Of a stretch of 64,000 nt of DNA, positions 15,263-59,043 are shown in pieces. The notes below the pieces were generated by a model. The model did no database searches. It was not told where the DNA came from and saw nothing but the letters and a program-made list of their open reading frames with translations. The stretch lies in the IMG/VR virus record IMGVR_UViG_3300034073_003340, positions 248,001 through 312,000 of that record, one strand, 5' to 3'. Within the stretch, counting starts at the first letter, position 1. Each line of letters opens with the position of its first letter. The position numbers and the translations under genes were made by a program.

Positions 15263-15634
15263 TCAAATCCATGGTTTCAAACTCGAAAGAATTTCTTCTC
15301 GATCTTTGACATTGATGGGACCGATGCCAAGGGCAGTGATCATGGGTCGCGGGAACACGGTGAGTCCAGCATCCTTGACCAAAAAGACTCCACATTTTGG
15401 CTTATAAATTCTGCTGAGACTGTGGAGGATTTCCTCATCTGCCTTCAAGCAAACTTTTGCTACCACGTCGGTATCAAGATATGCTTGAGCCATTGAGGGG
15501 AATCTGACTGTTGAATCAACAAAGGCATGGACGAAAGCATGGCCTATCTGCGCTCCCATCTTTCCTCGGTTTCCTTTGCTCTCCGAGATTGCCTCATTAC
15601 TTACAATGGCATAAAGCTTGATATCAGTCATCAC
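15263..15634 (-). CDS. pth2: Peptidyl-tRNA hydrolase, Pth2 (archaeal/eukaryotic-type) family
   Basis: GKMGAQIGHA, KVCLKA, VKDAGLTVF, TALGIGP. Confidence 0.9.
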   Translation of the reverse strand: MMTDIKLYAIVSNEAISESKGNRGKMGAQIGHAFVHAFVDSTVRFPSMAQAYLDTDVVAKVCLKADEEILHSLSRIYKPKCGVFLVKDAGLTVFPRPMITALGIGPINVKDREEILSSLKPWI

Positions 15635-17238
15635 ATCTCTTCAACTGTTTCAATGCCAAGAAGACCAAGACCGGTTTCCAAATAGGCATGTAGATAATAA
15701 ACAAACCCAACACGGCTCGGGTCAGTGGAAATTTGATACTTTCCATAATAAGCTGAGAACTTCTGAGCAATGGTGTAGAGGTATTCGGCTAATAGGTGAG
15801 GACTCAAACTATCCTCCACACGATTCATCACATCAGAAAAAGCCAGCAGGTCCAGGACTATTTGTCGCTCTTCATCGCAAGTAATCTTGATATTACCAAT
15901 ACCTACCGTCTGCTTATCCAAGATGCTCTTCATCCGAACCAGCTGATAAAGAAGATAAGGTCCAGTTTTACCCTCATGAGCGAGAGCACGATCAATGTCA
16001 TATGCGTAGTCGTTTGACCGCTTGTTTTGTAGGTCATTGAATTTGATAGCAGCAATCGCCACCTTACGAGCAATCTCAGGATCAGGATTTTTAGCTAGAG
16101 CCTTTTCGATTGCTTCATCGAGCAAATCGCGCAGCTTGGGAACACCTCCTGCGCGGGTTCGAAAAGGCTTGCCGTCAAACCCTTGAATAGTTCCAAACCC
16201 CGCGTGGGTGAGCTTCATAGTGTGGCCCATTTGCTTGGCAGCATCAAAGACCTGCCGAAAGTGAAGCCCCTGTCGCTGGTCCACCACGTAGATGATCTCT
16301 GTGGGGTTGGCTTGGGCGCGCTCCTGAATAGTCGCAAGATCAGTAGCAGCGTAAAGGTATCCTCCTTCGCTGTTTGTAAACATAAGCGGAGACAACGCAG
16401 GGTCTTTACAATAAATGACCTCGGCGCCTTCACTTGTCTTTAGAATATCCTTTGCCATCAGTTGTGATTCTAAGACCGGCAAAAGAAGAGCGGTATTGCT
16501 TTCACCATTGTATAGATCAAATTTTATATTGAGGATCTCTAGATCAGCCAAAACGCTCTTTTGTGTTGCTTCAACTATCTTACCCCAGATCTCAAGTAAG
16601 TCTGGATCGCCCAGTTGAAGTCGCCGTGTGAACTTCTGAGCTCCTTTCTTGAACCCTTCGTCGTTCTTGGCCCGATCGGCGGCAAGTGGATAGATCTTCT
16701 GTAGATGCTCAATTGTGTAATTGTTACCATCGGATGCCCGGAAGTCCTCATACATCAGAGCAGCAAGAACTAGACCCATCTGGTAGCCCCAGTCACCCCA
16801 GTGAATGTCGGTGATTACATCGTAGCCTTGATAGACCAGAATCTCCCGAAGACTCTTGCCGATCACCAGACTCCGCAGGTGACCAACATGCATCGCCTTA
16901 GCTACATTGGGGCCACCATAGTCGATAATTTTGAGTTGACCTTTGCGGTTAGTCTTTTGTGGAACTCGCAAGGCAATTTCTAAGATCGCGTTATTGGTGC
17001 GAGCATTGATAAAACCGGGTCCAGCAATGGTGAGGTCGAATCGAGGATCGTCAAATGCGTTGATTATCGTCTGAGCTATATCTCGAGGAGACTTACCCAG
17101 TTGCTTGGCTGACACTAGCGCACCGTTACACTGAAAATCGGCCAAGTCGGGACGGTCACTTCGCGTTACGACGGCGAAATGCTCGGGAATACCTGCGGCT
17201 TGGAAAGCCTTTGCGAGAGAATCAGCAAGAATTTTCAT
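15631..17238 (-). CDS. argS: Arginyl-tRNA synthetase
   Basis: ADFQCNGA, GPGFIN, PNVAKAMHVGHLRS, GDWG, YAATDLA, YVVDQRQ, KPFRTRAG, DALR-like C-terminus. Confidence 0.97.
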   Translation of the reverse strand: MKILADSLAKAFQAAGIPEHFAVVTRSDRPDLADFQCNGALVSAKQLGKSPRDIAQTIINAFDDPRFDLTIAGPGFINARTNNAILEIALRVPQKTNRKGQLKIIDYGGPNVAKAMHVGHLRSLVIGKSLREILVYQGYDVITDIHWGDWGYQMGLVLAALMYEDFRASDGNNYTIEHLQKIYPLAADRAKNDEGFKKGAQKFTRRLQLGDPDLLEIWGKIVEATQKSVLADLEILNIKFDLYNGESNTALLLPVLESQLMAKDILKTSEGAEVIYCKDPALSPLMFTNSEGGYLYAATDLATIQERAQANPTEIIYVVDQRQGLHFRQVFDAAKQMGHTMKLTHAGFGTIQGFDGKPFRTRAGGVPKLRDLLDEAIEKALAKNPDPEIARKVAIAAIKFNDLQNKRSNDYAYDIDRALAHEGKTGPYLLYQLVRMKSILDKQTVGIGNIKITCDEERQIVLDLLAFSDVMNRVEDSLSPHLLAEYLYTIAQKFSAYYGKYQISTDPSRVGFVYYLHAYLETGLGLLGIETVEEM

Positions 17239-17276
17239 ACCACTTTTTAACTTGAAAGTGGTAGAAGAGCAAGTGC

Positions 17277-17558
17277 TTAAAATCGCTGTAGTTTCAGCAG
17301 CATGGCAGACTTCAACCCATGCTCTTTAGCATGATAGTAAATCTCACCCGCGTAGTGGAACTGGACTAGCGCGCTATCCAGGTGATCGTTCAAATCCGCC
17401 CCATCAGCCAACAGATATTTGATGACTTTGGAGTTTTCCTCCCATGCCTGTCGCATATTCAAGCCGCGGAAACGACTTCCTCTGAAACCAATTATGTCAG
17501 CCTGTCGCGCTCGTAGACACGCTTCCTTGGTCTTTTCCCTGAGATCCTCGAGCGTCAT
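17277..17558 (-). CDS. Hypothetical protein, paralog of 17555-17824
   Basis: Shared (T/I)xxDLRE start and IYYHAKxHGxxSAxxLKL end. Confidence 0.65.
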   Translation of the reverse strand: MTLEDLREKTKEACLRARQADIIGFRGSRFRGLNMRQAWEENSKVIKYLLADGADLNDHLDSALVQFHYAGEIYYHAKEHGLKSAMLLKLQRF

Positions 17559-17824
17559 GGAGTCGTCAATTTGAGCATCAAAGCCGATCGCATCCCATGC
17601 TTTTTGGCATGATAGTAAATTCGGCCAACTTCATAGAATTTGTAAACGTCAGCAACTGGTTTAGCGGCTGGAGGAAATTTTTCATGAAGCTCTATTATTT
17701 TCCCAACTTCCACCCAAAACTCTCTCATATTGGCCGTTTGGGAGGATTTATGCTTATAGGCCGCACGAGCAGCGGGTAATGCCGCTTTCATCTGTTCCCT
17801 GAGGTCGTCGATCGTTATAGGCAT
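17555..17824 (-). CDS. Hypothetical protein, paralog of 17277-17558
   Basis: Tandem duplicate with the same motifs. Confidence 0.65.
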   Translation of the reverse strand: MPITIDDLREQMKAALPAARAAYKHKSSQTANMREFWVEVGKIIELHEKFPPAAKPVADVYKFYEVGRIYYHAKKHGMRSALMLKLTTP

Positions 17825-18279
17825 TAGCTGCTAGCCATACCACCCACACACCAAACCGTCTTGGTGGACTTGGCGGCTTGTGCTGCTTCAATAGCCCGCA
17901 CCTTTTCTGTTGCCTTGTCCCGGCGAGCAGTCAGTGTCTTGATAACGCTGGGAGCCTTTTTTTCGCGCTTGGCGTTCCAGAGGTTGTTGGCGGCAATTCG
18001 AGATTTTTCGCGGGCCATGAGGAGCGGCTTCGTTTCCCGGATCACCTTGACCTGTGCCCAGTAGGCGTCGTCCTTGCGCTTGTCGGAAAGGAATTCCTCA
18101 AACTCTTCATAGGTGTTGAAGACATGCGAGGTAACCCGACCACTGTTGAGCATACCGATTGCTCCGCTGTAGGAGTGTCCGTCTTCGTGCCGACTCTGCT
18201 CACAGTCTTTGTCCCAAAGCTTCTGCGCCTGAGCCAGCGTCTTGCCGGGATAGCTGCGTCCTACCAAACATGCGCCCAT
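17824..18279 (-). CDS. Hypothetical phage protein
   Basis: Early promoter, AGGAGA RBS; EDGHSYSGAIG motif. Confidence 0.7.
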   Translation of the reverse strand: MGACLVGRSYPGKTLAQAQKLWDKDCEQSRHEDGHSYSGAIGMLNSGRVTSHVFNTYEEFEEFLSDKRKDDAYWAQVKVIRETKPLLMAREKSRIAANNLWNAKREKKAPSVIKTLTARRDKATEKVRAIEAAQAAKSTKTVWCVGGMASS

Positions 18280-19692: not shown

Positions 19693-20328
19693 TTAGACCA
19701 AATCCCAATCCGGATCCTTGACCGATTGACGGGCAAAGAACTTTTCGATCATCGCCTTGACATCAGCAAACAGCTTGGGATCGCCCTCGGTCAGGCCAGG
19801 CAGAACATCGGCCTTTTCCTGAACCCACTTGCGAGCGAAGCCAGGATCATGCGCTACGATGCTGGGCAGGTTGCTCTTGATGTCTGCGAGCTTGACTGTC
19901 TTGCGCTCAGGCGTAGCCAGCCAAGCGTGTTCCTTGTCCAAATTGCGACGGAAGGCACGATTGCCATCTTCGGGCTTGCTGACATCGGAGACTTCAGCGA
20001 CACCTGCGACAATCTCTGCCGCGACATCGTTACCAAACTGTTTGCCGAAGAATTCCCGAATGGCACCGAGGCCCTTGGTAGTGTCCTCTTCGCAGTCATG
20101 TAGCAGGGCAACCGCGACATTGATGGCATCATTGTGGATGCTCAGGCTCACCATTTTGGCCACCTGGATGGGGTGGACTTCATAGTGAGCTTTGGAATAT
20201 TTGCGACGCTGCCCGCCCAGGACCGGGTCAGGCTTCAGCGCATGGTTGCGGTGCGCATCGATCATGAATTCCATTGCCGCAACGACAATGGGATCCTGCA
20301 TTACATCATATGTGGTTTCTTGGTTCAT
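19693..20328 (-). CDS. HD-domain (p)ppGpp hydrolase-like protein (SpoT/Mesh1 small alarmone hydrolase type)
   Basis: AH..QRRKY..YEVHPIQVA, ALLHDCEEDT, VKLADIKSN. Confidence 0.85.
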   Translation of the reverse strand: MNQETTYDVMQDPIVVAAMEFMIDAHRNHALKPDPVLGGQRRKYSKAHYEVHPIQVAKMVSLSIHNDAINVAVALLHDCEEDTTKGLGAIREFFGKQFGNDVAAEIVAGVAEVSDVSKPEDGNRAFRRNLDKEHAWLATPERKTVKLADIKSNLPSIVAHDPGFARKWVQEKADVLPGLTEGDPKLFADVKAMIEKFFARQSVKDPDWDLV

Positions 20329-21544: not shown

Positions 21545-21567
21545 TCGTATAACCTAGCGCAATTTGC

Positions 21568-23142
21568 CTATGAGTCAATATCGTATTGACGTAGCAGGGC
21601 AATTGTATTCTTCAGGCCGTAAGCTTGGGTAAAGGCTCCAAACCTCGGACCGTCACTTGACCCCAAGAGACATTCATAGAGGGCCCGGAACCAAGACCGT
21701 AGAGGTTCAAACCCATGCCGCTTGCCTACTTCATAGACCTGATACTGATAATGCTCTGCTGTCATATTTTCCAGCATACCAGAAAATCGCGCAGCAAGTT
21801 CGTTGAACGCTTGTCGTTCCTTACTTGTTGGCTCACGACGCTCACGATCAAATAGGCCCTTGTCAGCGGCATAGGCAATAACCTTGGGAGCCATCTCCTT
21901 GACATATTGAATTGTAGGTCCCGAAAGCTCGCGACCTTGCTCCAAATAAGCCAGCAACTTGTCGGGCTCTCGAGTTTGGCCCACAATAGCTAGATTCAGC
22001 ATGAGGCTATAGGAAATATCCTCTCCGAGCATTTCCGGATCCTTGATCTGAAAATGCCACGTCGCGTCGTCAGGAGTGATTTCAGCCTTCTGACATAACT
22101 TGATAAACTGATCCTCTAGCTGCGGAACCAAGTCTCTGTAGAGCTTCTTAGCAGCTCGTGGGTTTTGGAACATCAATAACATAAGCGACCCATGTGATCC
22201 ATAGGTCAACCATTCCTCAATAGTGAACCCGTTGCCCTTGCTCTTACTGATCTTGGCTCCGTGCTCATCTAGGAACAACTCATAGGTCAGGTTAAGAGGA
22301 GGAGTGCCGCCGAGGACACGACAGATCTCACTGGAAAGATTGACACTATCCATGAGATCCTTGCCAGACATTTCATAGTCCACGTCAAAAAACGTCCAGC
22401 GCATTGCCCAGTCAACATACCATTGAAGCTTGGCATTGCCATCATGTATATTGCGGAGACCCTCATGGCAGATAATGGTTCCTCGCTCCGCGCCTAGCGT
22501 AACACCGCTGTTGATTACTCGGCCTTGCTCACTCAGCGGCATGAACGGACTATATGTGGATCGACGTTCGTTCTTGAACGTGGGTAGTAGAATATTCAGA
22601 ATGGCCTGATAGTTGTCCCACACGCGATCCAGCATGTCGTTGAAGGCACCGGCCCAGTAGTATTCACTTGAACTCACCATCCCATAGCGAGCTCCCTGAT
22701 GAATGTTGCCAAGTGAGCTACCGTCGAATGATTGAAGAAGAGGCTCAACGAACCTGGCAAGCTTTTCATTGTTGGCTTGCCCAAAGCTAGCCTCTGGGAT
22801 ATCTTCATAGGGATATGGATTAGGGACATGCGTCAGCGGCTTGCCCAGATGCTCGTTCATCCACTCAGGCATATCATCGGGAACCTTACGAAGTGCGTCG
22901 TAATCGTCCGAAAACATAATGAGTCGAGTGCGATAGGCATGATTAGTAAGCTTATTGAAAGCTCGCATCACCCACAAAGTGCGGACAACCTCACCAAAGG
23001 TCCCAATATGTGGCGCCCCTGAGGGACCGTAGCCCGTCTCGAACGTCACCAAATCACCGGGCTTCTTTCCCTTCTTCTCGATATGAGCGAGAAGATTTCG
23101 GGCCTCTTGAAAGGGCCAAGCTCGCGCGTTGGTGACGTTCAT
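21568..23142 (-). CDS. lysS: Class I lysyl-tRNA synthetase
   Basis: AWPFQEA, FETGYGPSGAPHIGTFGE, DYEMSGKDL, KISKSKGN, GPRFG; start reassigned to ATG 23142. Confidence 0.97.
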   Translation of the reverse strand: MNVTNARAWPFQEARNLLAHIEKKGKKPGDLVTFETGYGPSGAPHIGTFGEVVRTLWVMRAFNKLTNHAYRTRLIMFSDDYDALRKVPDDMPEWMNEHLGKPLTHVPNPYPYEDIPEASFGQANNEKLARFVEPLLQSFDGSSLGNIHQGARYGMVSSSEYYWAGAFNDMLDRVWDNYQAILNILLPTFKNERRSTYSPFMPLSEQGRVINSGVTLGAERGTIICHEGLRNIHDGNAKLQWYVDWAMRWTFFDVDYEMSGKDLMDSVNLSSEICRVLGGTPPLNLTYELFLDEHGAKISKSKGNGFTIEEWLTYGSHGSLMLLMFQNPRAAKKLYRDLVPQLEDQFIKLCQKAEITPDDATWHFQIKDPEMLGEDISYSLMLNLAIVGQTREPDKLLAYLEQGRELSGPTIQYVKEMAPKVIAYAADKGLFDRERREPTSKERQAFNELAARFSGMLENMTAEHYQYQVYEVGKRHGFEPLRSWFRALYECLLGSSDGPRFGAFTQAYGLKNTIALLRQYDIDS

Positions 23143-23202
23143 TTTCTTTTCCTCTTGACTTCTCGAGAATACGATACGTGATACCACCGAGAAGTCAATC
23201 AT

Positions 23203-33000: not shown

Positions 33001-33327
33001 ATGTCAAATAGTCGCACGAGTATTTACGTTATTGGCCCCGAGGGTGGGCCTTTTAAAATTGGTTATAGCGCCTGTCCACACAGCCGGTTATCATCGCTCC
33101 AGACTGGATCAACTCAAAAGTTGATTTTACATTATAGCGAAGAAACAGACACCGAAATTGCGAGGGTGATTGAACAATTGATCCATCGCCAGATTGGACA
33201 CAAGAGAATTCGTGGAGAATGGTTTGATGTTGGTTTGGATGAAGCAATTGGAGAGGTAAGGTTCGCCTTTATCCGTTGGGAAGATGAACCTTACCTAGTT
33301 TCCAAATTCAAAAACAAGCTTCTTTAG
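33001..33327 (+). CDS. GIY-YIG-like T5orf172/MUG113 nuclease domain protein
   Basis: IYVIG..FKIGYS..RL..LQTG...E..IH...RIRGEWF. Confidence 0.85.
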   Translation: MSNSRTSIYVIGPEGGPFKIGYSACPHSRLSSLQTGSTQKLILHYSEETDTEIARVIEQLIHRQIGHKRIRGEWFDVGLDEAIGEVRFAFIRWEDEPYLVSKFKNKLL

Positions 33328-33773
33328 GAAAGAAGCGACTTCACAATGGCACTGGCCTTTGCCTTGTCCAGCGAAGTCCCAAAGGTCTTGGTCAGGCTGG
33401 CCATGATGCCACCCATTGCCTTCATGTTCTTTTCCGACAAGCTAGCAATCAAGCTTTCAGCTTCGCCACGGATCTCATCCTCACTGGCCATCTGCGGCAG
33501 CAAGGACTCGAGGATCTCGAGTTCAGCCAGCGACAGTTCGTGGTCAGGCTTGAGGCTTAGGGTGTCCTTGACCTGCTTGATAGCCTTTTGAATTGCCCGC
33601 AGGGCGTCCTCATCATTGGCCTTGACCGTCGAGAGATCAGCACCGGCCTTGACCGCGCGCTCCTTGGCATTCGCAGTAGCGGTAGCTTGGACGCTCTGGA
33701 AGCTGCCGGCAAGCGGGTCGCGGGCCTTCCGCAGTTCGAGGGTTTTTGCGTTCAATGCGGCGAGCACACTCAC
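33324..33773 (-). CDS. GatB/YqeY domain protein
   Basis: ELEILESLLPQMASEDEI, KAMGGIMASL, ASAIVKSLL. Confidence 0.85.
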   Translation of the reverse strand: MSVLAALNAKTLELRKARDPLAGSFQSVQATATANAKERAVKAGADLSTVKANDEDALRAIQKAIKQVKDTLSLKPDHELSLAELEILESLLPQMASEDEIRGEAESLIASLSEKNMKAMGGIMASLTKTFGTSLDKAKASAIVKSLLS

Positions 33774-43314: not shown

Positions 43315-43905
43315 TTATCCAAGAAGTGACCTAAAAGTCAAAGAGATTCTCGACTTCGACTGAAAGCCAGCCTTGGGAATCCTGTGCTGATGCGTGGACT
43401 GAAACCCGGCGGGCATCAAGCAAAGCGATCCCTGTTCCAAAGGCTGATCAACAACCGGACCATAGGTCATCTTGCCGTCGACTTCACCTAGTTTTTCGCG
43501 GAACTGAATGCTCCTCGGTTTGCTGGATCCTTCGCCACCATACAGCGTAACAATTGCGATGGGCTTGGTATGATCGATGCCGGGGTCGTCATCTTCATGC
43601 CAACCCAACCAGTCATGAGCACCCTCATATCCGTTGAGGAAACATCCCTCAAAGTCCACAAGCACCGCAGCATGGTTCATGAGAGCCAAGGTACATTCAT
43701 CAATCACATTGTGGGAATCCTGGCTGTGATAGGTCCGGAGACCTGCACCGCGACCATAGGAATAGTCCCGACCAAAGATGTTGGTCCAGTATTCCCTCCG
43801 GGGAGCATCGCTGCGCCGTTCCCAGTTGAGCCCATTCCAGAGCTCATTGAACATCTCGGCCGCTCGTTCGACGCTGACGAAATTAGGAATGTAGATTGCG
43901 CTCAT
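43315..43905 (-). CDS. alkB: AlkB-like 2OG-Fe(II) dioxygenase (ALKBH2/3-type)
   Basis: CFLNGY, LGWHEDD, HQHRIPK, RISLTFR. Confidence 0.9.
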   Translation of the reverse strand: MSAIYIPNFVSVERAAEMFNELWNGLNWERRSDAPRREYWTNIFGRDYSYGRGAGLRTYHSQDSHNVIDECTLALMNHAAVLVDFEGCFLNGYEGAHDWLGWHEDDDPGIDHTKPIAIVTLYGGEGSSKPRSIQFREKLGEVDGKMTYGPVVDQPLEQGSLCLMPAGFQSTHQHRIPKAGFQSKSRISLTFRSLLG

Positions 43906-44006: not shown

Positions 44007-44099
44007 TGGTGGAAGTGCCCGGACTTGAACCGGGATCGTCGCCTAATCTGGGCTTTCGCGAGGTATAAGCTCACCCGCTCTACCTTGAGCTACACTTCC
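44007..44099 (-). tRNA. tRNA-Ile(UAU) with long variable arm
   Basis: GGAAGTG/CACTTCC-ACCA; GTGAG-CTTATAC-CTCGC; GCC/GGC variable stem; 93 nt. Confidence 0.8.
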
Positions 44100-45257: not shown

Positions 45258-45333
45258 TGGTGGCCCATATGGGACTCGAACCCACAACCGACAGATTTTA
45301 GAGATCCCTGCTCTACCATTGAGCTAAAAGGCC
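45258..45333 (-). tRNA. Amber suppressor tRNA (CUA)
   Basis: 76-nt cloverleaf; loop CT-CTA-AA; CCA encoded; one mismatch each in the acceptor and anticodon stems. Confidence 0.8.
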
Positions 45334-46166: not shown

Positions 46167-46700
46167 TTAGCGATTATACCCACCGCGATTGATTTCAACC
46201 AGCTTGGGGAAAAGCATCAGCTTTTCTGTGTAGTAGGTCTTGACAATCTGGAGGAGTTCTCCCCCGAGACCCAAGTAGTCATCCACGTATTCAATCATCA
46301 ACCGATTGGGAAACATCGCAGGACGATGAGCCTTCATCCAGTCAAAGGCAGACTGTGGATCCATACCGTTCTGAATCAGGATACCAATACCCACGGCCGT
46401 ACTGCGGCTCTTACCAGCAGTACAATGAACCAACAGCTTGCCATTCTCAGGAACCATTGCGGCAACTTCTAGTATACTCCTGATATCCCGGCGTGTGGGC
46501 ACGACGTATTCGGTCGCAGCATCGTTTTCCACATCATGAAAGCTGAAGATATAGTGATCGCTATGTTGGCGATCAATTACCGTTGCGCCAAAGTCGCCGC
46601 CTGCCTCGTTGACAATGCTGATAATATGGGTGGGCCAGTCCTCGGCGATGAGGTGCTTGGCTTTGTGAATTCCATCAACTTTAAGTTCCATCTGTCCCAC
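46167..46700 (-). CDS. Protein-tyrosine/dual-specificity phosphatase-like protein
   Basis: FHDV, LLVHCTAGKSRSTA (CX5R), RPAMFPN. Confidence 0.88.
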   Translation of the reverse strand: MGQMELKVDGIHKAKHLIAEDWPTHIISIVNEAGGDFGATVIDRQHSDHYIFSFHDVENDAATEYVVPTRRDIRSILEVAAMVPENGKLLVHCTAGKSRSTAVGIGILIQNGMDPQSAFDWMKAHRPAMFPNRLMIEYVDDYLGLGGELLQIVKTYYTEKLMLFPKLVEINRGGYNR

Positions 46701-47189: not shown

Positions 47190-47278
47190 TGGCGGAGCGT
47201 CTGGGATTCGAACCCAGGGAGGTTTTACCCTCGTCAGTTTTCAAGACTGGTGCAATAATCCATCTCTGCCAACGCTCC
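47190..47278 (-). tRNA. tRNA-Ser(UGA)
   Basis: GGAGCGT/ACGCTCC-GCCA; CT-TGA-AA loop; long variable arm. Confidence 0.92.
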
Positions 47279-48204: not shown

Positions 48205-48729
48205 TTAGGAGTGAGTCAACCTGTTTTTCCTGATTGTCATCAAAGCCGCCTGATAAATGGTTTGCTTATATACATCAAGGCGATCCTTGATGGCGTCAGG
48301 GCTTATGACTACCGGGTTCAGACATTCATCGTTTTCAACGTATGGCGTACAACGCATTACATCTGCGACATAAAATTGCTGATAGGAAACGGGCCAAGGA
48401 TATGAATACAGTTCCGGGCGGTTACCTTCACAGGTTTGTTCCAAGTAACCCACCGCTCTGATATGACTTACCCAGCAGCCAGTTTCTTCAAAGCATTCAC
48501 GATGCGCTGCGGCACATGACGTCTCCCCTAGATTGATATGACCACCAGGAAACTCCAGTCCGCGCCGACGATTGTTGGCCATTACCAAGCTGCCATCGGC
48601 CAACAAAGGAACCATAAAGGCAGTGCTAGTTGACTCCGCCGGAGATAGATCATCGTCTAGATAAAATATTACCTTGTTGGGCTTTGACAAGTAACTGATG
48701 TCGTCAATCTGATAGGTCTTTTGCTTCAT
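48205..48729 (-). CDS. Nudix hydrolase (YtkD-like)
   Basis: RRGLEFPGGHINLGETSCAAAHRECFEETG Nudix box. Confidence 0.92.
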   Translation of the reverse strand: MKQKTYQIDDISYLSKPNKVIFYLDDDLSPAESTSTAFMVPLLADGSLVMANNRRRGLEFPGGHINLGETSCAAAHRECFEETGCWVSHIRAVGYLEQTCEGNRPELYSYPWPVSYQQFYVADVMRCTPYVENDECLNPVVISPDAIKDRLDVYKQTIYQAALMTIRKNRLTHS

Positions 48730-50833: not shown

Positions 50834-51553
50834 TTACTTGGTTACGATGAAATCGAAAACGTGATCTTCACCGGCAAAATTAACAGTGACCGAGATATTC
50901 TCAGGATACTTGGTCTTTTTGATCTTGTTGAGAACCACCCGACCGCCGTAGGTTCCATCCGGATCCACGGTGGTGGTTTGGAGGATCTCATCATTGAGAT
51001 TGTCGAGTGTTTGCTGGAGCCGATACTGACTCAGAGCAATACCACCAGCCCCGGCTGCGATAGCTGCTACCTGTCCGCCACTGAGACCGGGATTCTGAAT
51101 CCGTGTGGTATAAATGCCACCGCGAGGGGTTTGAGTAGTGATGATAGTGTTGTTGTTCTGTGCTGCTGCCGCAACCCCTGCCAGCATCGCTATGCCGATC
51201 TGTGACCACATCGCTCGGTTTTTGGCTTTGCTTTCCAGTTCATCCTTGGTAAAGCAAGCGATCCGTTCTGCACCGCGAGTCATGAAAACATTCTCGACGC
51301 CGAAGTTGGTGGACTCAGTTCCTTTGTTGAATGCGACCACCATGAACTGGAGACTGCCATGATCCAGAGAAGGAATGGGCATAATGCGAACAGCGCCGTT
51401 GGTCATGTCATCCTCGATAGTCGGATCGCCCTTCTCATACCGAACGGTCTGTCCTTCACGTGGAACAGGTTTGATGCTGATTGGCTTTGCCAAGGCCGGC
51501 ACTGAAATACACATGGCAGCAGCTAGTGCCACGCTGATAAAGCTCTTGAACAT
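50834..51553 (-). CDS. Hypothetical secreted protein
   Basis: Signal peptide VPALA; AGGAGA RBS. Confidence 0.65.
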   Translation of the reverse strand: MFKSFISVALAAAMCISVPALAKPISIKPVPREGQTVRYEKGDPTIEDDMTNGAVRIMPIPSLDHGSLQFMVVAFNKGTESTNFGVENVFMTRGAERIACFTKDELESKAKNRAMWSQIGIAMLAGVAAAAQNNNTIITTQTPRGGIYTTRIQNPGLSGGQVAAIAAGAGGIALSQYRLQQTLDNLNDEILQTTTVDPDGTYGGRVVLNKIKKTKYPENISVTVNFAGEDHVFDFIVTK

Positions 51554-51649
51554 TTCGATCTCCTTTTTAAGATAATCAAACGTAACAAAGGCTTAGAGGA
51601 TGTCAAGTTCAGATGTGGAGAACCCCCAGCCGTTTCCGACCGGGGGTTC

Positions 51650-52505
51650 ATGAAAGGTTGAGAATACACCTTTTACAAAACGTCTTCGAGCATTATCCCT
51701 GGCTTCTGACCAGTTTTCTCTCGATTTCCACTAAGCGTAGCCGAAGCAGTCACTTAGTAACGTTCCAAAGCCGCCAACTTATAGACCGCTGGCATTAGCG
51801 GTGTCCTTACGGGCCTTTCGGTAGTGTCTAGTTACGCCTGGAATCGCTTCCAGTTAAGCGGCCGCTAAGCCACAACATACCCTCTTCTACCAACACTAGT
51901 AGACGTTTGCCCCTACCAGTGTCCCTGTTAGCTTGCGCCCAGGGAATTAGGCTTTTTCAGCCTCGTAAGCGAGTCAGGCTTTCATTTTTTGACAGCTATG
52001 TCTAAAACAGCTATGTTTAACCCATTGCGATGTGCTGACTCAGTAGCTTCAAAGGCTTTTGACCTCCAAAATACTACACACCACGTATCTTTCGCCTTGC
52101 GGGGCTACTTGATCAGTTTTCAAGAACTGTAACACACGGCTGAACCCGTATATTCCAATCCTATCAACTTGCCACTTGCCCTTGGCGCGACCCTCGGACT
52201 GTAGTGACTATCTCTTCCCACTTGGTACTGACCATATTTCGCTGGCGACGTTGGGGTGCGAAACCCATTATCGAGCCATCCGTTGGACCACTCGACGTAT
52301 ACCGCTTTCGCGGAACAGTCATCCTATGGCGTCCTACCTATCTCCGCAACCCGTAAAGGCCCGAAGAGCTATCTTTTGGATAGCAGGGTGAGACTTGCTT
52401 GTTATTGACCTATATTGCTATAGGCGAGACCTATTGGGTTTCAGCCCCTTTCCCTAAGTTGCCCCAGGTTATCTGCTACAAGCAGCAATCTCTAATCTCT
52501 TGAGC
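51650..52505 (-). ncRNA. Large structured ncRNA, GOLLD-like
   Basis: ~855 nt without a credible ORF, between a TTGACA-N17-TACTTT promoter and a terminator at 51620-51649; many GNRA-capped hairpins; GTGGTGTGTAGTATT..CAAAAG and GTGTATTCTCAACC segments recall GOLLD. Confidence 0.7.
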
Positions 52506-52659
52506 CTCTAAAGTAACACCAAAGCATCACCTTGTCAACAAAAAAGATTCGATCGTTACCAACATTTTGCTTTGCGTAGCTCTGCGCCGTGTTGGTCTCA
52601 CTCTTATATGTAGATTCAACAAAGGCGTCAACAACAAAAATGTGCTCTATGACATTTTC

Positions 52660-53790
52660 TTACGCGGCTATTCTTTCTTCAATTCTTTCAGAGAGTTCCA
52701 GAATGGCAGAACGCGCTTCCTCAACTGACATCTGAAACCATTCACCGTTTGGTCCACGCTTTTTAGCAAAAAACTTATGGATCACCTTTTCTGCAAGAGC
52801 TCGATCTAGAAAACCATGATAGAACGCGAATGAGAAGTCACTGTGAGGATTGTGGGTATTGAAAGCCACCAACCGTTGCTGCAGATCCATGGTCTGTCCG
52901 ATCTTCACCCATCCAGGAAACGTAGGTGACGTCACTACATATACAAAGCCACGCTTGTCACTGGATCTACTCTGCACCGTTCGCAGTTTGGGTTGAGCAT
53001 TGCGAAGAGCCTGTTGGAAGGCTTCCTGCTCGGCGACACGCACAGATTCCACTTGTTCTGTATTAGCGTCTTCGTGGGCTAATGAAGCTTTAAGGAAGGG
53101 CCCTACTTTATCCAACAGCGCGGCGCGTATATCAGCATCTGACGTTTTACCACTCTGATATAGTTTGACTATAAATTCTCGTCTGGCTTGGTTGCCTCCT
53201 AACGCTGAATTCAGTCGCTGTATGCTTCTACGACGACGCAGGTTATGTTCTATAACAAGGTTTCGCCAAGTTGCTTGAAAACGCCTCTGGAAACGTATGT
53301 AGGAAACATCCTCTATCTTTTCTTCTTTGTATTCTTGAGAACGAGCTTGGATTACCTTTTCAATCCATTCGGGAACTGACCTCCCGTAAGAAGCAAATAG
53401 ATCTCGAAACCGTTGCTGGCGATTGATCGCCCGTTCGTCGCGCACCTCTCTAGATAGGGGAACAATAGCAGTAGGACGTGATGCTAGAATCTGTCCTACT
53501 TCTAATATGAATTCTTTTCGAACGGCATCCAACACCGTCGGCGCTAGTAATTCACGCTCCCATAATAGAGGTTCACCTAGAAAACCATGATCAACGATCT
53601 TTGAGAACTGATACTTAGTTCCATAGTACATAAGGATATGATCATCAGCATCAGCTCGAGAAATTGTGCCCAGACCAAGATTCTTTCTGATACTGTTGTA
53701 AGTGTTGAAGCAAGAACGAAACTGTTTTTCACATATTGTCCAGCCACCGAATGGCACTACGGCTAACTCAGACTTGTTCTTTTTGCCCAC
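52660..53790 (-). CDS. Protein with C-terminal T5orf172/GIY-YIG domain
   Basis: GFVYVVTSPTFPGWVKIGQT..RL..FNT...AEKVIH...GEWF. Confidence 0.8.
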   Translation of the reverse strand: MGKKNKSELAVVPFGGWTICEKQFRSCFNTYNSIRKNLGLGTISRADADDHILMYYGTKYQFSKIVDHGFLGEPLLWERELLAPTVLDAVRKEFILEVGQILASRPTAIVPLSREVRDERAINRQQRFRDLFASYGRSVPEWIEKVIQARSQEYKEEKIEDVSYIRFQRRFQATWRNLVIEHNLRRRRSIQRLNSALGGNQARREFIVKLYQSGKTSDADIRAALLDKVGPFLKASLAHEDANTEQVESVRVAEQEAFQQALRNAQPKLRTVQSRSSDKRGFVYVVTSPTFPGWVKIGQTMDLQQRLVAFNTHNPHSDFSFAFYHGFLDRALAEKVIHKFFAKKRGPNGEWFQMSVEEARSAILELSERIEERIAA

Positions 53791-54511: not shown

Positions 54512-54512
54512 C

Positions 54513-55222: not shown

Positions 55223-55295
55223 TGAGCACCTCCTATCTTGCCACCAGATATAGCACCAGGTTTTTAGGCGTCAACCGTTTAGGTGAATAAATTCA

Positions 55296-56324: not shown

Positions 56325-56912
56325 TGATCGATCTCCTCAATCTGATCAATAACATGGACTATGTCTTTGTCAATCAGAACAAATAGACAACTAAGGAACC
56401 TTCCCAAGCTGGATATCAATCCATGCCAATTTGGCCAACATTGCTGATTGTTCGTTTGGGAGGAGGGCCTGTAGCTTTGTTTTCTTTTCTCCAAACCCCC
56501 TATCTGAAACCATATGCGAAGCCAACCATGATAGATTTCGCGCTATAATTTCTCTGGATTGTTCAGGGGTAAGCCCAGTCTCGGCATCATTGCCTACCAA
56601 AACCCAACCAGACGCATGATTATTAAGCCATTCATAAAGAAAAGGCAACTCCTTGCGGGCTACGGTGATTTTGGCCGGTATTTTCATATGATTCAGGTTA
56701 CTGGATTTTGAAGAAAAATCAACCAGAAACAACAAGACCCGGTGGAAACCACCGGGTCTTGTCTAGGGACTTTCACCCCATGCGCTCGACCGTCTGTGCT
56801 CTGAGCCGGCGAACCGGTTATCCAAGGGATGGAAGAGCACATCTCATTCCCTTTTATCTACCGAGGTCAACCTATGTCGAGAGGTTGATTTAACTCGATA
56901 GCGACTTCTAAG

Positions 56913-56987
56913 CATCGGGGGATGGGCTCGAACCACCGCCGACCGCAGCTTCACGCCGCAGCGCTCTACCAACTGAGCTACCCCGAT
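56913..56987 (-). tRNA. tRNA-like RNA with abnormal anticodon arm, no encoded CCA
   Basis: ATCGGGG/CCCCGAT acceptor, canonical D arm and T arm; CTGCGGC-GTGAA-GCTGCGG arm. Confidence 0.65.
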
Positions 56988-57096
56988 ATAAGGGGTGGAG
57001 ACTTGCCGGTCTCCACCCCTAGGAGGTGCGTCGCTAGGCTTGCACCGCCTCTGTCACAATGGCTACAATAACTCATAGCCAATGTCAACAGATATT

Positions 57097-57810
57097 TTAG
57101 TCGTCCGACTTGATTCCCACAAAACGTAGGATAAAGAGGAACATATTCAGGAAGTCGAGGTAGAGGTTCAAGGCCCCCATGACCACGATGCGACCCTGTG
57201 TGTCACCGCTCATGCTGGGATCGTAGGCGTCCTTGAGACTCTGCGTATCCCAGGCAGTCAGACCAGCGAAGATCAAAATACCCGCAATACCAATGAACAG
57301 ATTCAAGCCGCTGCTGGGAATGAAAATATTCAAGATCATGAGAGCAATCAGACCAAACAAAGCAAATACCAGAAATGCTCCAATTGGTCCTAGATCACGC
57401 TTGGTGGTGTAGCCGTAGAGGCTACACCCTGCAAAGCCAACCGCACTAGCAAGAAAAGCCATGAGGATAGATCCTCCTGTGTATCGGCTCAAAATCACCG
57501 AAAGTCCCAACCCTTCGAGGACCACAAAGGTCCAATACAAAGTGTGGAGAGTTGTCAGCTTCATGCGCTCAACACCCAGACTCATCGCCAGCACAAGACC
57601 CAACGGGGACAATGCCACCAGCCAGAACAGGAGACCACCCTGCTTTAAAATCTCCAACATGCCACTCGCAGTAGCAAACCATGCTGCGCCTGCGCTGACC
57701 AAGAGACCCATAAGCATCATGTTATAGATGCCCGTCATATAGTTGCGAAGTCCCTGGTCATAGGACACGCTTCGTGAAATTTCCATGTGATCATTCTCCC
57801 TAGGGTTCAC
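57097..57810 (-). CDS. Bax inhibitor-1/YccA family membrane protein
   Basis: DQGLRNYM, YGYTTKRDL, AGLTAWDTQ, GALNLYLDFLNMFLFILR. Confidence 0.93.
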   Translation of the reverse strand: MNPRENDHMEISRSVSYDQGLRNYMTGIYNMMLMGLLVSAGAAWFATASGMLEILKQGGLLFWLVALSPLGLVLAMSLGVERMKLTTLHTLYWTFVVLEGLGLSVILSRYTGGSILMAFLASAVGFAGCSLYGYTTKRDLGPIGAFLVFALFGLIALMILNIFIPSSGLNLFIGIAGILIFAGLTAWDTQSLKDAYDPSMSGDTQGRIVVMGALNLYLDFLNMFLFILRFVGIKSDD

Positions 57811-57846
57811 AGATCCAGTATAATGGAGGAATACCCAAAGGTCAAC

Positions 57847-59043
57847 TTACTTGATGAGACTCTGAATCTCCATGAGCAGGAGAGCTGGCGTAATCTCTTC
57901 AGCATGTTGTTTTCCTAGGCGTCGTAATGAAACCACGCCTTTTTCAACATCACGTTGACCAATCACTACGATCCAGTTGCGCTTCATCTCACTATGTTCT
58001 TTTATCTTTTGTTTTAGATTCTCATCTCGGTCGTCGTAAATCACGCGAGCACCTTGGACCTGTGCCAAATCTCTAAAGGCCTCTGATGCTTTTTCTCCGC
58101 CTGGTAACGGTATCACCACTACATTCTCAGGTGAAAGCCAGAACGGCAGATTGCCTTCATAGTTTTCAAGCAATATACCAATAAAGCGTTCAAAAGAGCC
58201 GAGAATAGCGCGATGTAACATAACAGGTCGCTGACGACTACCATCTGCGGCCACATATTCAGCCTCTAGGCGTTCTGGTAATACCATATCCAATTGGATC
58301 GTGCCGCATTGCCATTGACGTCCTTTGAGATCCTTGAGAGCAAATTCTAGTTTGGGACCGTAGAATGCCCCTTCGCCTTTCTGAATGACAAAGTCCAGGC
58401 CAGCAGCTTTGACAGCTTCTGAAAGATCGTGCTCTGCTTTGTTCCAGTCTTCTTCGGAACCAGCTCGCACCGCTGGGCGGGTCGATAGGCCGACCACAAC
58501 ATCAGAGAACCCAAAGTCATTATACACCTCCTTTAGCAAGAGGATGAAAGACTTTACCTCATCAACTACCTGCTCAGGCGCGCAAAATATATGCGCATCG
58601 TCTTGCGTAAACTGTCGAACTCTCATGATTCCATGTAGAGCGCCACTTGGTTCACTGCGATGACAACAGCCAAACTCTGCCAAGCGAATTGGAAGTTGTC
58701 TATATGAAACTACACCACTGTTGAATATCTGGACATGACCAGGACAGTTCATTGGCTTAATCGCAAACTGCCTTTGGTCATCATCTAGAACATACATATG
58801 ATCTTGGAACTTCTCCCAATGACCAGACTTCTCCCATAGGGATTTATCAACCAGCTGCGGCGTCTTGACCTCTTGGTAGCCATCACGTCTGAGTTTTGAT
58901 CGTATATACTCTTCAATAATCCTGAAGAGTTCATAGCCCCGAGGATGCCAAAATACTGACCCCGCGGCATCATCCTGGAGATGAAAAAGTTTGAGGTCAC
59001 GACCAAGACGACGATGGTCGGAATTAGAAAGTTGAATATCCAT
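57847..59043 (-). CDS. thrS: Threonyl-tRNA synthetase lacking N-terminal TGS/editing domains
   Basis: DHRRLG, KPMNCPGH, MRVRQFTQDDAH, GAFYGPK, QCGTIQLD, HRAILGSFERF; 398 aa. Confidence 0.97.
   Translation of the reverse strand: MDIQLSNSDHRRLGRDLKLFHLQDDAAGSVFWHPRGYELFRIIEEYIRSKLRRDGYQEVKTPQLVDKSLWEKSGHWEKFQDHMYVLDDDQRQFAIKPMNCPGHVQIFNSGVVSYRQLPIRLAEFGCCHRSEPSGALHGIMRVRQFTQDDAHIFCAPEQVVDEVKSFILLLKEVYNDFGFSDVVVGLSTRPAVRAGSEEDWNKAEHDLSEAVKAAGLDFVIQKGEGAFYGPKLEFALKDLKGRQWQCGTIQLDMVLPERLEAEYVAADGSRQRPVMLHRAILGSFERFIGILLENYEGNLPFWLSPENVVVIPLPGGEKASEAFRDLAQVQGARVIYDDRDENLKQKIKEHSEMKRNWIVVIGQRDVEKGVVSLRRLGKQHAEEITPALLLMEIQSLIK

What the first reader, a model, noticed from the sequence alone, without database searches (positions are those of the whole stretch)
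15263..59043. Phage-encoded tRNA charging and recycling module: three aminoacyl-tRNA synthetases, Pth2 and YqeY alongside non-canonical tRNAs
Seen: ArgRS coupled to Pth2, class I LysRS, ThrRS, a stand-alone YqeY protein, a SpoT-like hydrolase, and about 9 tRNAs, many with atypical folds. Established: aaRS genes are uncommon in phages and multiple aaRS are better known from eukaryotic giant viruses; Pth2 frees tRNA from peptidyl-tRNA. Inference: a semi-autonomous tRNA supply system that keeps translation running under host tRNA- or aaRS-targeting defence or the stringent response. The phage enzymes might charge the atypical phage tRNAs, for example the compact Arg-CCU.
Basis: partly seen in the sequence, partly recalled or inferred. 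Interest (0 to 1): 0.72.

Follow-up and report, generated by a model that had tools for sequence, protein, structure and literature searches.

The report
Huge phage's scattered translation-support genes
A complete 436-kb phage genome carries its own tRNAs, six tRNA-charging enzymes and tRNA-rescue enzymes, which is a known habit of huge phages, but its threonine and valine enzymes have lost their proofreading domains, as they have in related huge phages.

Summary
The window holds Pth2 joined to ArgRS, a SpoT-type HD hydrolase, class I LysRS, YqeY, ThrRS and 7 confident tRNAs plus about 4 weak tRNA-like loci. All enzymes keep their catalytic motifs.

The contig is a complete tailed phage of 435,856 bp. 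It is not cellular and not chimeric.

Three parts of the reading need correction:
- The genes are not a compact module. They lie among about 75 mostly unknown genes on the edge of a 34-kb tRNA island, 59 tRNAs genome-wide.
- The genome has six full aaRS: Arg, Lys-I, Thr, Val, Cys and Glu.
- Multiple aaRS, Pth2 and alarmone hydrolases are already published for huge and jumbo phages, as is the idea that they charge phage tRNAs.

What I add:
- ThrRS lacks its N-terminal editing domain and ValRS lacks its CP1 editing domain. No editing domain was found anywhere in the genome.
- The same short forms recur in huge-phage contigs, while all 80 nearest cellular ThrRS are full length.
- Several tRNAs have the wrong architecture for their anticodon.
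- A GOLLD RNA lies inside the span.
- The ArgRS–Pth2 junction is specific to this lineage.

Verdict: a new member of a known kind, with an under-described enzyme variant.

The parts
15263..15634 (-). Pth2-type peptidyl-tRNA hydrolase, 122-123 aa. Its start overlaps the ArgRS stop codon.
   Evidence: PF01981 at 47.5 bits against a cut-off of 23. The GKM.AQ..HA and DAG.T motifs align to archaeal Pth2 structures. Relatives at 60-73% identity occur in four huge-phage contigs.
15631..17238 (-). Arginyl-tRNA synthetase, 535 aa, full three-domain architecture.
   Evidence: PF03485, PF00750 and PF05746. TIGR00456 at 328 bits, above the cut-off. The HVGH motif aligns to bacterial ArgRS structures. The gene is absent from this position in four syntenic relatives.
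19693..20328 (-). Single-domain RelA/SpoT-type HD hydrolase, similar to a small alarmone hydrolase, 211 aa.
   Evidence: PF13328 at 32 bits against 27.2. The LLHDCEEDT motif is present. It is 68-77% identical in syntenic huge-phage relatives. A second copy lies at genome 344193-344633.
21568..23202 (-). Class I lysyl-tRNA synthetase, 544 aa.
   Evidence: PF01921 at 302 bits. NF001968 at 539 bits, below its cut-off. HIGT and KISKS motifs align to the P. horikoshii LysRS structure. Many relatives sit on contigs of 250-470 kb. The nearest named cellular relatives are Alphaproteobacteria at 44-46% identity.
33324..33773 (-). Stand-alone YqeY / GatB-tail-like protein, 149 aa.
   Evidence: PF09424 at 50-52 bits against a cut-off of 27.
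43315..43905 (-). AlkB-like 2OG-Fe(II) oxygenase next to the first tRNA. It may repair nucleic-acid methylation damage.
   Evidence: PF13532 at 35 bits against 31.2.
44007..44099 (-). tRNA with anticodon UAU, 93 nt. It has a long variable arm (type II), base A73 and an encoded CCA end.
   Evidence: ARAGORN. Rfam tRNA model at 49.9 bits.
45258..45333 (-). Amber suppressor tRNA, anticodon CUA, 76 nt.
   Evidence: ARAGORN. Rfam at 54.1 bits. No signal of TAG recoding in the genome.
46167..46700 (-). Dual-specificity phosphatase-like protein.
   Evidence: PF00782 at 34.1 bits against 33.5.
47190..47278 (-). tRNA-Ser(UGA), 89 nt, canonical type II.
   Evidence: ARAGORN. Rfam at 49.4 bits.
48205..48729 (-). 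NUDIX hydrolase, similar to the RNA pyrophosphohydrolases YtkD and RppH.
   Evidence: PF00293 at 38.6 bits. TIGR02705 at 50.7 bits, below its cut-off.
51655..52084 (-). GOLLD RNA, conserved part, lying in a 1.1-kb gap without genes.
   Evidence: RF02032 at 164 bits against a gathering score of 150, covering the full model 1-416.
56912..56987 (-). Atypical 76-nt tRNA. It has anticodon UGA but a short variable loop, G33 in place of U33, and no encoded CCA.
   Evidence: ARAGORN. Rfam at 44.1 bits. An identical copy is in the close relative L019.
57847..59043 (-). Threonyl-tRNA synthetase, 398 aa. It has only the catalytic and anticodon-binding domains, with no TGS or editing domain.
   Evidence: TIGR00418 at 474 bits, matching model positions 169-562 only. 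It aligns to E. coli ThrRS residues 240-615 with the zinc ligands and motifs 2 and 3 kept. dN/dS is about 0.04. Short forms recur in huge phages, while 80 of 80 cellular relatives are full length.
59931..60065 (-). Element resembling a tRNA or Y RNA, below threshold.
   Evidence: Rfam YrlA at 30 bits against 69, and a 36-bit hit to an unrelated sRNA model. ARAGORN calls it only at a lowered threshold.
60345..60421 (-). tRNA with the Leu anticodon UAA, 77 nt. It has a short variable loop (type I) but a Leu-type D arm and A73.
   Evidence: Rfam at 59.3 bits. ARAGORN. The relative L019 carries a type II version with the same acceptor stem. Two paralogous type I Leu-anticodon tRNAs lie in the main array.
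62379..62892 (-). Tight cluster of degenerate tRNA or tRNA-like genes. It includes Ser(GGA) at 62484-62569, a Sec-like fold with anticodon CGA at 62575-62659 and Asp(GUC) at 62819-62892. It continues into the main tRNA array to the right of the window.
   Evidence: ARAGORN at default and lowered thresholds. Rfam tRNA-Sec at 37.8 bits against 47, and Rfam tRNA at 33.6 bits.

Best explanation
The window is the left flank of the tRNA island of a complete 436-kb tailed 'huge' phage from subsurface and soil metagenomes. Its likely host is a proteobacterium, perhaps an alphaproteobacterium.

The phage carries a dispersed set of translation-support genes:
- 59 tRNAs, with every amino acid represented and two amber suppressors among them;
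- six catalytically intact aaRS (Arg, class I Lys, Thr, Val, Cys, Glu);
- an archaeal/eukaryotic-type peptidyl-tRNA hydrolase (Pth2);
- two small SpoT-type HD hydrolases;
- a YqeY tRNA-binding-type protein;
- a GOLLD RNA.

Inferred mechanism. During infection the phage tops up and maintains the pool of charged tRNA for its own mRNAs as host tRNAs, aaRS and the stringent response or tRNA-targeting defences shut translation down.
- The aaRS charge phage and host tRNAs.
- Pth2 frees tRNA from peptidyl-tRNA or N-blocked aminoacyl-tRNA.
- The HD hydrolases remove (p)ppGpp and/or the 3'-pyrophosphate that toxic alarmone synthetases put on the tRNA CCA end.

Shown here: gene identities, intact motifs, purifying selection, viral origin, and conservation of LysRS, the HD hydrolase, Pth2, the short ThrRS and the short ValRS in related huge phages.

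Inferred, not shown: every enzymatic activity, the substrates and the timing.

A distinctive shown feature is that the phage's aaRS set has no editing function. ThrRS lacks its N-terminal editing domain. ValRS lacks its CP1 editing domain. No free-standing editing domain was detected.
For: Viral and complete:
- IMG/VR record with direct terminal repeats, and CheckV estimates 100% completeness.
- Baseplate, tail fibre, virion protein and T4-type DNA polymerase by PHROGs.
- Four aaRS families that hit all 14 control cellular genomes are absent.
- The same stretch was assembled independently as 62-kb and 75-kb contigs. A second strain about 90% identical also bridges the Pth2–ArgRS junction.

Gene identities.

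Motifs intact.

Selection: ThrRS dN 0.059 against dS 1.36.

Conservation:
- The order LysRS, HD_4, Pth2 is syntenic in relatives of 277-465 kb.
- The short ThrRS sits in an 11-member clade made only of huge-phage sequences, with SH-aLRT support of 97.
- The 26 closest clusters are all 397-405 aa.
- The short ValRS occurs in 9 or more huge-phage contigs and about a dozen clusters at 50% identity.

Cognate tRNAs exist for all six aaRS.

Literature:
- Huge phages with up to 67 tRNAs and 15 aaRS (PMC7162821).
- Pth2 and HD alarmone hydrolases in jumbo phages (PMC7824862).
- A phage small alarmone hydrolase removes the tRNA modification installed by a toxic alarmone synthetase (PMC11245113).
- GOLLD RNAs lie near phage tRNA islands.
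Against: - There is no expression or biochemical data. No RNA run holds the sequence.
- The genes are scattered among unrelated genes rather than forming an operon.
- ArgRS is missing from the syntenic position in four relatives, and Pth2 is missing next to ArgRS in three others. The set is therefore fluid.
- Only six of twenty aaRS are present, so the phage stays dependent on the host.
- The HD_4 and Pth2 scores are modest. Both fall below the NCBIfam equivalog cut-offs.
- The host is unknown, so no mismatch between host and phage tRNAs or codon usage could be tested.
Confidence: 0.6

Rival explanations
1. The editing-free enzymes are a selected trait. The phage runs a relaxed-fidelity or partly orthogonal charging system. 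Its short ThrRS and ValRS, and perhaps LysRS and ArgRS, would serve the architecturally odd phage tRNAs. The phage would then either tolerate or exploit mischarging, or escape host control of aaRS.
For: - ThrRS lacks the TGS and editing domains, and ValRS lacks CP1. The genome has no tRNA_SAD or YbaK domain.
- Short forms are conserved and under selection across huge phages, while all 80 nearest cellular ThrRS are full length.
- Many phage tRNAs have non-canonical architecture, including Thr(CGU) at 82 nt, Lys(UUU) at 81 nt and Lys(CUU) at 88 nt.
- From my own knowledge: E. coli ThrRS without its N-terminal domain is active but mischarges serine.
Against: - Domain loss may simply be genome streamlining with no effect on phenotype.
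- Host ThrRS and ValRS could edit in trans.
- Odd tRNAs are not concentrated among the cognates of the phage aaRS.
- The canonical identity elements G1-C72, C2-G71, G35 and U36 are present in all three phage tRNA-Thr.
- No mischarging data exist.
Confidence: 0.15
2. The aaRS and tRNA genes are loosely held host-derived passengers. They were acquired piecemeal, are individually dispensable, and have no coherent function as a system.
For: - The layout is scattered.
- ArgRS is present here but absent from the syntenic place in relatives.
- There are HisRS and GlyRS-like fragments.
- T5orf172 and GIY-YIG-type mobile-element genes are interspersed.
Against: - ThrRS, LysRS and ValRS fall in deep groups made only of phage sequences, 40-60% identical to any cellular protein. 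They are not recent captures.
- Purifying selection is strong.
- The remodelled domain architecture is shared across phages.
Confidence: 0.12
3. The aaRS supply aminoacyl-tRNA, or aminoacyl-adenylate, for something other than protein synthesis. Examples are tRNA-dependent DNA hypermodification, cell-wall or metabolite chemistry, or signalling. Proofreading would then be unnecessary.
For: - Phage tRNA-dependent DNA modification exists: Mu Mom uses Gly-tRNA (PMC13219725).
- The editing domains are lost.
- DNA-modification genes are nearby, namely an N6/N4 methyltransferase and 2OG oxygenases.
Against: - All anticodon-binding domains are retained.
- Full sets of cognate tRNAs sit beside the genes.
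- No aa-tRNA-dependent transferase was identified in the window.
Confidence: 0.08
4. The contig is cellular (a reduced symbiont) or a chimeric assembly, so the 'phage aaRS' are really host genes.
For: It carries many tRNAs and several aaRS. The genome size overlaps that of tiny symbionts.
Against: - Structural phage genes are present.
- Direct terminal repeats, and CheckV estimates 100% completeness.
- Four universal aaRS families are missing.
- GC content is uniform.
- The same stretch occurs in single contigs in two runs, and a variant strain occurs in two more.
Confidence: 0.01

Closest known systems
Huge phages of Al-Shayeb et al. 2020 (Nature 578:425; PMC7162821)
   Same: - Genome over 200 kb from environmental metagenomes.
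- Dozens of tRNAs and several aaRS.
- The aaRS are related to, but distinct from, those of the host phylum.
- The paper proposes that the phages charge their own tRNA variants.
- Its supplementary GenBank files already contain a 1245-nt ThrRS and a 1410-nt ValRS, which are the same short forms.
   Different: - This genome is a separate IMG/VR record.
- In what I could read of the paper and 200 supplementary files, the loss of editing domains is not mentioned.
- The ArgRS–Pth2 junction is specific to this lineage.
Jumbo-phage RNA-repair and counter-alarmone genes (Iyer et al. 2021, PMC7824862)
   Same: [quoted passage not shown] Pth2 is read there as a ribosome-rescue and tRNA-recycling enzyme.
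   Different: That survey notes that jumbo phages usually lack aaRS complements. Here Pth2 and the HD hydrolase sit within 8 kb of two aaRS, in an order that is conserved for LysRS, HD_4 and Pth2.
E. coli ThrRS lacking its N-terminal domain (PDB 1EVK/1EVL), yeast mitochondrial ThrRS (3UGQ) and crenarchaeal ThrRS-cat (3A31)
   Same: - They share the catalytic plus anticodon-binding architecture without an editing domain.
- The phage protein matches the E. coli and Salmonella truncated constructs (E about 1e-132) from the construct's first residues as far as phage residue 379.
- The zinc ligands are kept.
   Different: - The E. coli form is a laboratory truncation.
- The natural editing-less forms come from mitochondria and archaea and are much more distant (E 1e-76 and 1e-57).
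- The phage form is a natural, bacterial-type protein conserved in viruses.
Phage small alarmone hydrolase PaSpo of Salmonella phage SSU5
   Same: It is a single-domain RelA/SpoT-type hydrolase encoded by a phage. It is reported to remove the tRNA modification made by the toxic alarmone synthetase FaRel2 (PMC11245113).
   Different: No direct sequence comparison with PaSpo was made here. The activity of the window's protein is untested.
aaRS sets of giant viruses of eukaryotes (Nucleocytoviricota)
   Same: They also have multiple aaRS and tRNAs in a virus. Some giant-virus metagenome bins also carry short ThrRS.
   Different: Their hosts and origins are eukaryotic, and their virions are unrelated. 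This is a tailed bacteriophage.

Membership tests
Huge/jumbo tailed phage with expanded translation genes | Viral genome over 200 kb with tailed-phage hallmark genes | tested here: met
   435,856 bp with direct terminal repeats, and CheckV estimates 100% completeness. Baseplate wedge at 1089 bits, baseplate hub, tail fibre, virion protein and family B DNA polymerase.
Huge/jumbo tailed phage with expanded translation genes | Many tRNAs and one or more aaRS | tested here: met
   59 tRNAs. Six full aaRS and two fragments.
Arginyl-tRNA synthetase | N-terminal domain, class I catalytic domain with the HIGH motif, and DALR anticodon-binding domain. Score above the equivalog cut-off. | tested here: met
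   PF03485, PF00750 and PF05746. TIGR00456 at 328 bits against 261.65. HVGH aligned.
Class I lysyl-tRNA synthetase | tRNA-synt_1f domain with HIGH and KMSKS motifs | tested here: met
   PF01921 at 302 bits against 27. HIGT and KISKS aligned to structure 1IRX.
Class I lysyl-tRNA synthetase | Score above the NCBIfam equivalog cut-offs | tested here: not met
   NF001968 at 539 bits against 648. TIGR00467 at 140.9 against 147.55. It is a divergent phage lineage, 44-46% identical to the nearest named bacterial proteins.
Bacterial threonyl-tRNA synthetase | Class II catalytic core with zinc ligands and motifs 2 and 3, plus an anticodon-binding domain | tested here: met
   TIGR00418 at 474 bits against 383.65. 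The alignment to E. coli ThrRS keeps the MNCPGH, DDAHIF and HRAILGS segments.
Bacterial threonyl-tRNA synthetase | N-terminal TGS and editing (tRNA_SAD) domains | tested here: not met
   - The protein starts at about E. coli residue 240.
- There is no upstream open frame, and the neighbouring 126-aa protein has no family hit.
- PF07973 is absent from the whole genome.
Peptidyl-tRNA hydrolase Pth2 | PTH2 domain with conserved Lys and Asp active-site motifs | tested here: met
   PF01981 at 47.5 bits against 23. GKMGAQIGHA and KDAGLT aligned to structures 2ZV3 and 1WN2. It falls below the NCBIfam equivalog cut-offs.
Small alarmone hydrolase (RelA/SpoT hydrolase domain only) | Single HD_4 domain with the HD motif and no synthetase domain | tested here: met
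   PF13328 at 32 bits against 27.2, 211 aa. HDCEED motif. Only the N-terminal hydrolase part of TIGR00691 is matched.
Small alarmone hydrolase (RelA/SpoT hydrolase domain only) | Hydrolysis of (p)ppGpp or of 3'-pyrophosphorylated tRNA | not testable with these tools
   This needs an enzyme assay.
GOLLD RNA | Match to the covariance model above the gathering score, in a phage and near tRNA genes | tested here: met
   RF02032 at 164.1 bits against 150, covering the full model. The nearest tRNA genes lie about 4.4 kb (47190-47278) and 4.8 kb (56912-56987) to either side.
Stop-codon-recoded phage (suppressor tRNA with TAG or TGA read as sense) | Suppressor tRNA present | tested here: met
   Two tRNAs with anticodon CUA.
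Stop-codon-recoded phage (suppressor tRNA with TAG or TGA read as sense) | Coding density or gene continuity rises specifically when one stop codon is read as sense | tested here: not met
   No stop-specific gain was seen in any region. In-frame extensions after TAG are no longer than after TAA.

The most novel reading that the evidence does not exclude
Huge phages maintain, as a selected and vertically conserved trait, an aaRS set without proofreading. This set includes ThrRS without its N-terminal editing domain and ValRS without CP1, with no trans-editing factor. The consequence would be one of the following: phage-directed translation runs at altered fidelity; the enzymes escape host regulation or inhibitors that act through the lost domains; or these enzymes are the dedicated chargers of the phage's architecturally non-canonical tRNAs.
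Probability: 0.2. Interest if true: 0.7.

Novelty: new member of a known kind. Interest (0 to 1): 0.42.

Why it matters

The added value is specific and testable. The two phage aaRS that should proofread, ThrRS and ValRS, have both lost their editing domains. The same short forms are conserved under purifying selection across many huge-phage contigs, and none of the 80 nearest cellular ThrRS is short.

If this changes fidelity, or frees the enzymes from host control, it would be a natural experiment in minimal, editing-free aaRS. It would also be a source of compact bacterial-type synthetases.

The tRNA set offers natural cases for studying tRNA identity and evasion of tRNA-targeting defences. 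Examples are tRNAs with Leu anticodons but short variable loops, tRNAs with Ile, Met or Lys anticodons but long variable arms, and a Sec-like fold.

Tried and rejected
- Megablast of the aaRS region against GenBank phages found no match.
- Alternative genetic code: coding coverage with each stop codon read as sense and in-frame extension after each stop type gave no signal. I rejected recoding despite the two suppressor tRNAs.
- A conserved ArgRS–Pth2 operon is rejected. Three ArgRS relatives have no Pth2 nearby. Four Pth2 relatives have the same neighbours but no ArgRS.
- A separately encoded ThrRS editing domain or another trans-editing factor was not found. PF07973 and PF04073 are absent genome-wide.
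- A recent host donor for ThrRS was not found. The nearest cellular proteins are only 50-61% identical and branch outside the phage clade.
- Names for the NCBI-sourced short ThrRS clusters: none are on record.
- The 'compact Arg-CCU' tRNA appears only as weak or intron-mode calls.
- Most small ORFs of the span have no Pfam hit, so their role could not be assessed.
- Literature searches for editing-less phage ThrRS or ValRS returned nothing relevant. That library is incomplete, so this is not proof of novelty.

Full report
**What the contig is**

The window is bases 248,001-312,000 of a single 435,856-bp contig. IMG/VR classes it as a virus with direct terminal repeats, and CheckV estimates it 100% complete. 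It is JGI record 3300034073 Ga0310130_0000004.

- The first and last roughly 73 bases repeat.
- GC content is even, 0.44-0.53.
- PHROGs finds a baseplate wedge protein (1089 bits), a baseplate hub/tail lysozyme, a tail fibre, a virion structural protein, a T4-type DNA polymerase and an NAD-dependent ligase elsewhere in the genome.
- Four aaRS families that hit all 14 control cellular genomes are absent: PF00152, PF00579, PF01409 and PF01411.
- The ArgRS region occurs in single 62-kb and 75-kb contigs in two subsurface-metagenome runs. A second strain about 90% identical in two further runs also bridges the Pth2–ArgRS junction.

The 'cellular or chimeric' refutation therefore fails. This is a complete huge tailed phage.

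**The observation**

| Gene | Window coordinates | Main evidence |
|---|---|---|
| Pth2 | 15263-15634 | PF01981 |
| ArgRS | 15631-17238 | three Pfam domains, TIGR00456 above cut-off |
| HD_4 RelA/SpoT-type hydrolase | 19693-20328 | PF13328 |
| Class I LysRS | 21568-23202 | PF01921 |
| YqeY | 33324-33773 | PF09424 |
| ThrRS | 57847-59043 | TIGR00418 above cut-off |

The ArgRS stop codon overlaps the Pth2 start.

Alignments to solved structures show intact motifs:
- HVGH in ArgRS;
- HIGT and KISKS in LysRS;
- the zinc ligands and motifs 2 and 3 in ThrRS;
- the Lys and Asp motifs of Pth2;
- the HD motif in the hydrolase.

ThrRS shows dN 0.059 against dS 1.36 versus a 92%-identical relative. The 'inactive' refutation is therefore unlikely.

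**tRNAs**

ARAGORN tRNAs in the window. Rfam supports six of them and adds a Sec-like locus. Lowered thresholds add about four weak tRNA-like loci.

The atypical folds are real:
- anticodon UAU on a 93-nt tRNA with a long variable arm;
- Leu anticodon UAA on a 77-nt short-loop tRNA;
- Ser anticodon UGA on a 76-nt short-loop tRNA with G33;
- an amber suppressor;
- a degenerate cluster at 62379-62892, which includes a tRNA-Sec-like fold with anticodon CGA.

The UAA tRNA has a Leu-type D arm and A73. In a close relative the same acceptor stem sits on a normal long-arm tRNA-Leu. It is therefore most simply a tRNA-Leu that lost its variable arm. Two paralogues with anticodons CAA and UAG lie in the main array.

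The 'compact Arg-CCU' was not found as a credible call.

**Context changes the picture**

- The genome has 59 tRNAs, and 55 of them lie between genome 292 kb and 326 kb. The window is the left shoulder of that island.
- The finding's 44-kb span holds about 75 genes, most without any Pfam hit. Interspersed are NadE, 2OG oxygenases, T5orf172 proteins, a Bax1-I membrane protein, a DNA methyltransferase, a NUDIX hydrolase and a phosphatase. It is a neighbourhood, not a module.
- A GOLLD RNA (164 bits, above the gathering score) lies at 51655-52084. GOLLD RNAs are known to lie near phage tRNA islands.

Genome-wide, my scans of aaRS families give six full enzymes:
- Arg, Lys-I and Thr in the window;
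- Val at genome 124127-125518;
- Cys at genome 100291-101640;
- Glu at genome 213662-214930.

There is also a 150-aa HisRS fragment and a 272-aa GlyRS-like protein.

**Editing domains are missing**

ThrRS.
- It matches only positions 169-562 of the ThrRS model.
- It matches E. coli residues 240-615.
- It is thus the natural equivalent of the laboratory N-terminal truncation.

ValRS.
- It aligns to T. thermophilus ValRS in two pieces, residues 40-169 and 334-694.
- It lacks the intervening CP1 editing insert and the C-terminal coiled coil.
- It keeps the HIGH and KMSKS motifs.

The other four aaRS belong to families that, to my knowledge, carry no editing domain. No tRNA_SAD or YbaK-type editing domain exists anywhere in the genome.

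This is not a quirk of one genome.
- In viral contigs, every ThrRS on a contig of 190-608 kb is 386-490 aa. ThrRS genes at prophage borders are about 640 aa.
- All 80 nearest cellular ThrRS are Proteobacteria at 50-60% identity, and all carry an N-terminal extension. It is at least 233 aa in the 76 whose contig does not cut off the gene start.
- The 26 closest protein clusters are all 397-405 aa.
- On a tree, the window's ThrRS sits in an 11-member clade made only of huge-phage sequences (SH-aLRT 97), outside the proteobacterial clade. The reference set was limited to Proteobacteria and the tree is unrooted.
- The short ValRS recurs at 49-76% identity in nine huge-phage contigs. It forms about a dozen short single-stretch representatives among the 150 best matches in a library of 1.8 billion proteins.
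- The supplementary GenBank files of Al-Shayeb et al. include a 1245-nt ThrRS and a 1410-nt ValRS. 'Editing' occurs nowhere in the 200 files searched.
- My literature searches found no description of this loss.

**What is conserved and what is not**

- Four huge-phage relatives (277-465 kb) share the order LysRS, a 218-aa protein, HD_4, then Pth2 and its downstream genes. They have no ArgRS before Pth2.
- Three ArgRS relatives at 43-47% identity have no Pth2.
- The ArgRS–Pth2 coupling is therefore lineage-specific, while LysRS, HD_4 and Pth2 form the older core.
- LysRS has many relatives on contigs of 250-470 kb. Its nearest named cellular relatives are Alphaproteobacteria at 44-46% identity.
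- The nearest named ThrRS are also alphaproteobacterial, from the Rhodospirillales, at 57-61% identity.
- This points weakly to a proteobacterial, perhaps alphaproteobacterial, host or ancient donor. It is an inference only.

**Mechanism**

Shown: gene identities, intact motifs, selection, conservation, and cognate tRNAs for all six aaRS.

Inferred: the set sustains charged tRNA for phage translation when host supply fails or is attacked.
- Pth2 is already read as a tRNA-recycling and ribosome-rescue enzyme in jumbo phages, and HD alarmone hydrolases as counter-alarmone enzymes (PMC7824862).
- A phage small alarmone hydrolase removes the CCA-end modification made by a toxic alarmone synthetase (PMC11245113).
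- From my own knowledge, YqeY resembles the tRNA-binding tail of GatB and the C-terminal domain of Deinococcus GlnRS.

By my rough count, odd tRNAs are not enriched among the cognates of the phage aaRS.

**Comparison with what is known, and verdict**

- Huge phages with up to 67 tRNAs and 15 aaRS were published in 2020, along with the proposal that they charge their own tRNA variants (PMC7162821).
- A 2026 review repeats that phage aaRS came from many bacterial hosts.

The finding is therefore a new member of a known kind. The statement that multiple aaRS are mainly a giant-virus trait is outdated.

The part worth following up is the conserved, editing-free architecture of the phage ThrRS and ValRS, together with the non-canonical tRNA architectures. 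I give the strong reading, a selected change in fidelity, regulation or tRNA pairing, a probability of about 0.2.

Noticed in passing
window 51655-52084 (-), in the gene-free gap 51553-52660: A complete GOLLD RNA match (164 bits, gathering score 150) lies inside the finding's span. The 5' variable part may extend towards 52660.
   Followed up: partly
window 62575-62659 (-): A tRNA-Sec-like fold with a 6-bp D stem, a 4-nt D loop and a long variable arm, but anticodon CGA. It scores 37.8 bits, below the gathering score of 47. ARAGORN in intron mode reads the same place as Arg(CCU) with a 64-nt intron. From my own knowledge, it is reminiscent of 'allo-tRNA'-type folds.
   Followed up: partly
window 59931-60065 (-): A structured element containing a tRNA-like D-arm segment. 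It gives sub-threshold matches to the Y-RNA-like YrlA model and to an unrelated sRNA model.
   Followed up: no
window 60345-60421 (-) compared with L019:4819-4905: The tRNA with the Leu anticodon UAA is short-armed (77 nt) here. In a phage with 92% ThrRS identity it is long-armed (87 nt) with the same acceptor stem. This looks like a recent change in tRNA architecture.
   Followed up: partly
genome 124127-125650 (outside the window; L003): The 44 codons upstream of the first Met of the short ValRS are open and resemble the conserved ValRS N-terminus, but contain no ATG, GTG or TTG. Relatives start with GTG where this genome has GTT. An ATG with a strong ribosome-binding site lies one frame off. 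This could be an unusual start codon, a frameshift or a shortened protein.
   Followed up: partly
genome 319008-319460 and 97921-98739 (outside the window; L008, L009): A 150-aa HisRS fragment sits inside the tRNA array, and a 272-aa GlyRS-like protein lies elsewhere. Both are too short to be complete synthetases.
   Followed up: partly
window 45258-45333 and genome 99130-99204: There are two amber-suppressor tRNAs with anticodon CUA, although the genome shows no sign of TAG recoding. TAG is the rarest stop codon (70 of 646 called genes).
   Followed up: yes
window 17277-17824 (-): Two tandem paralogous genes of about 93 aa lie upstream of ArgRS. A co-occurring strain about 90% identical differs here by a 184-bp skip.
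   Followed up: no
window 52660-53790 (-) and 33001-33327 (+): Two T5orf172/MUG113-domain proteins, of the type associated with mobile elements, are interspersed with the translation genes. One lies directly beside YqeY.
   Followed up: no
window 57097-57810 (-): A well-conserved Bax1-I (BI-1/YccA-type) membrane protein (180 bits) lies immediately downstream of ThrRS.
   Followed up: no
genome 213662-214930 (outside the window; L010): The bacterial-type GluRS is only 422 aa. It matches its model in two pieces, with about 40 positions missing. Like the short ThrRS and ValRS, it appears trimmed.
   Followed up: partly
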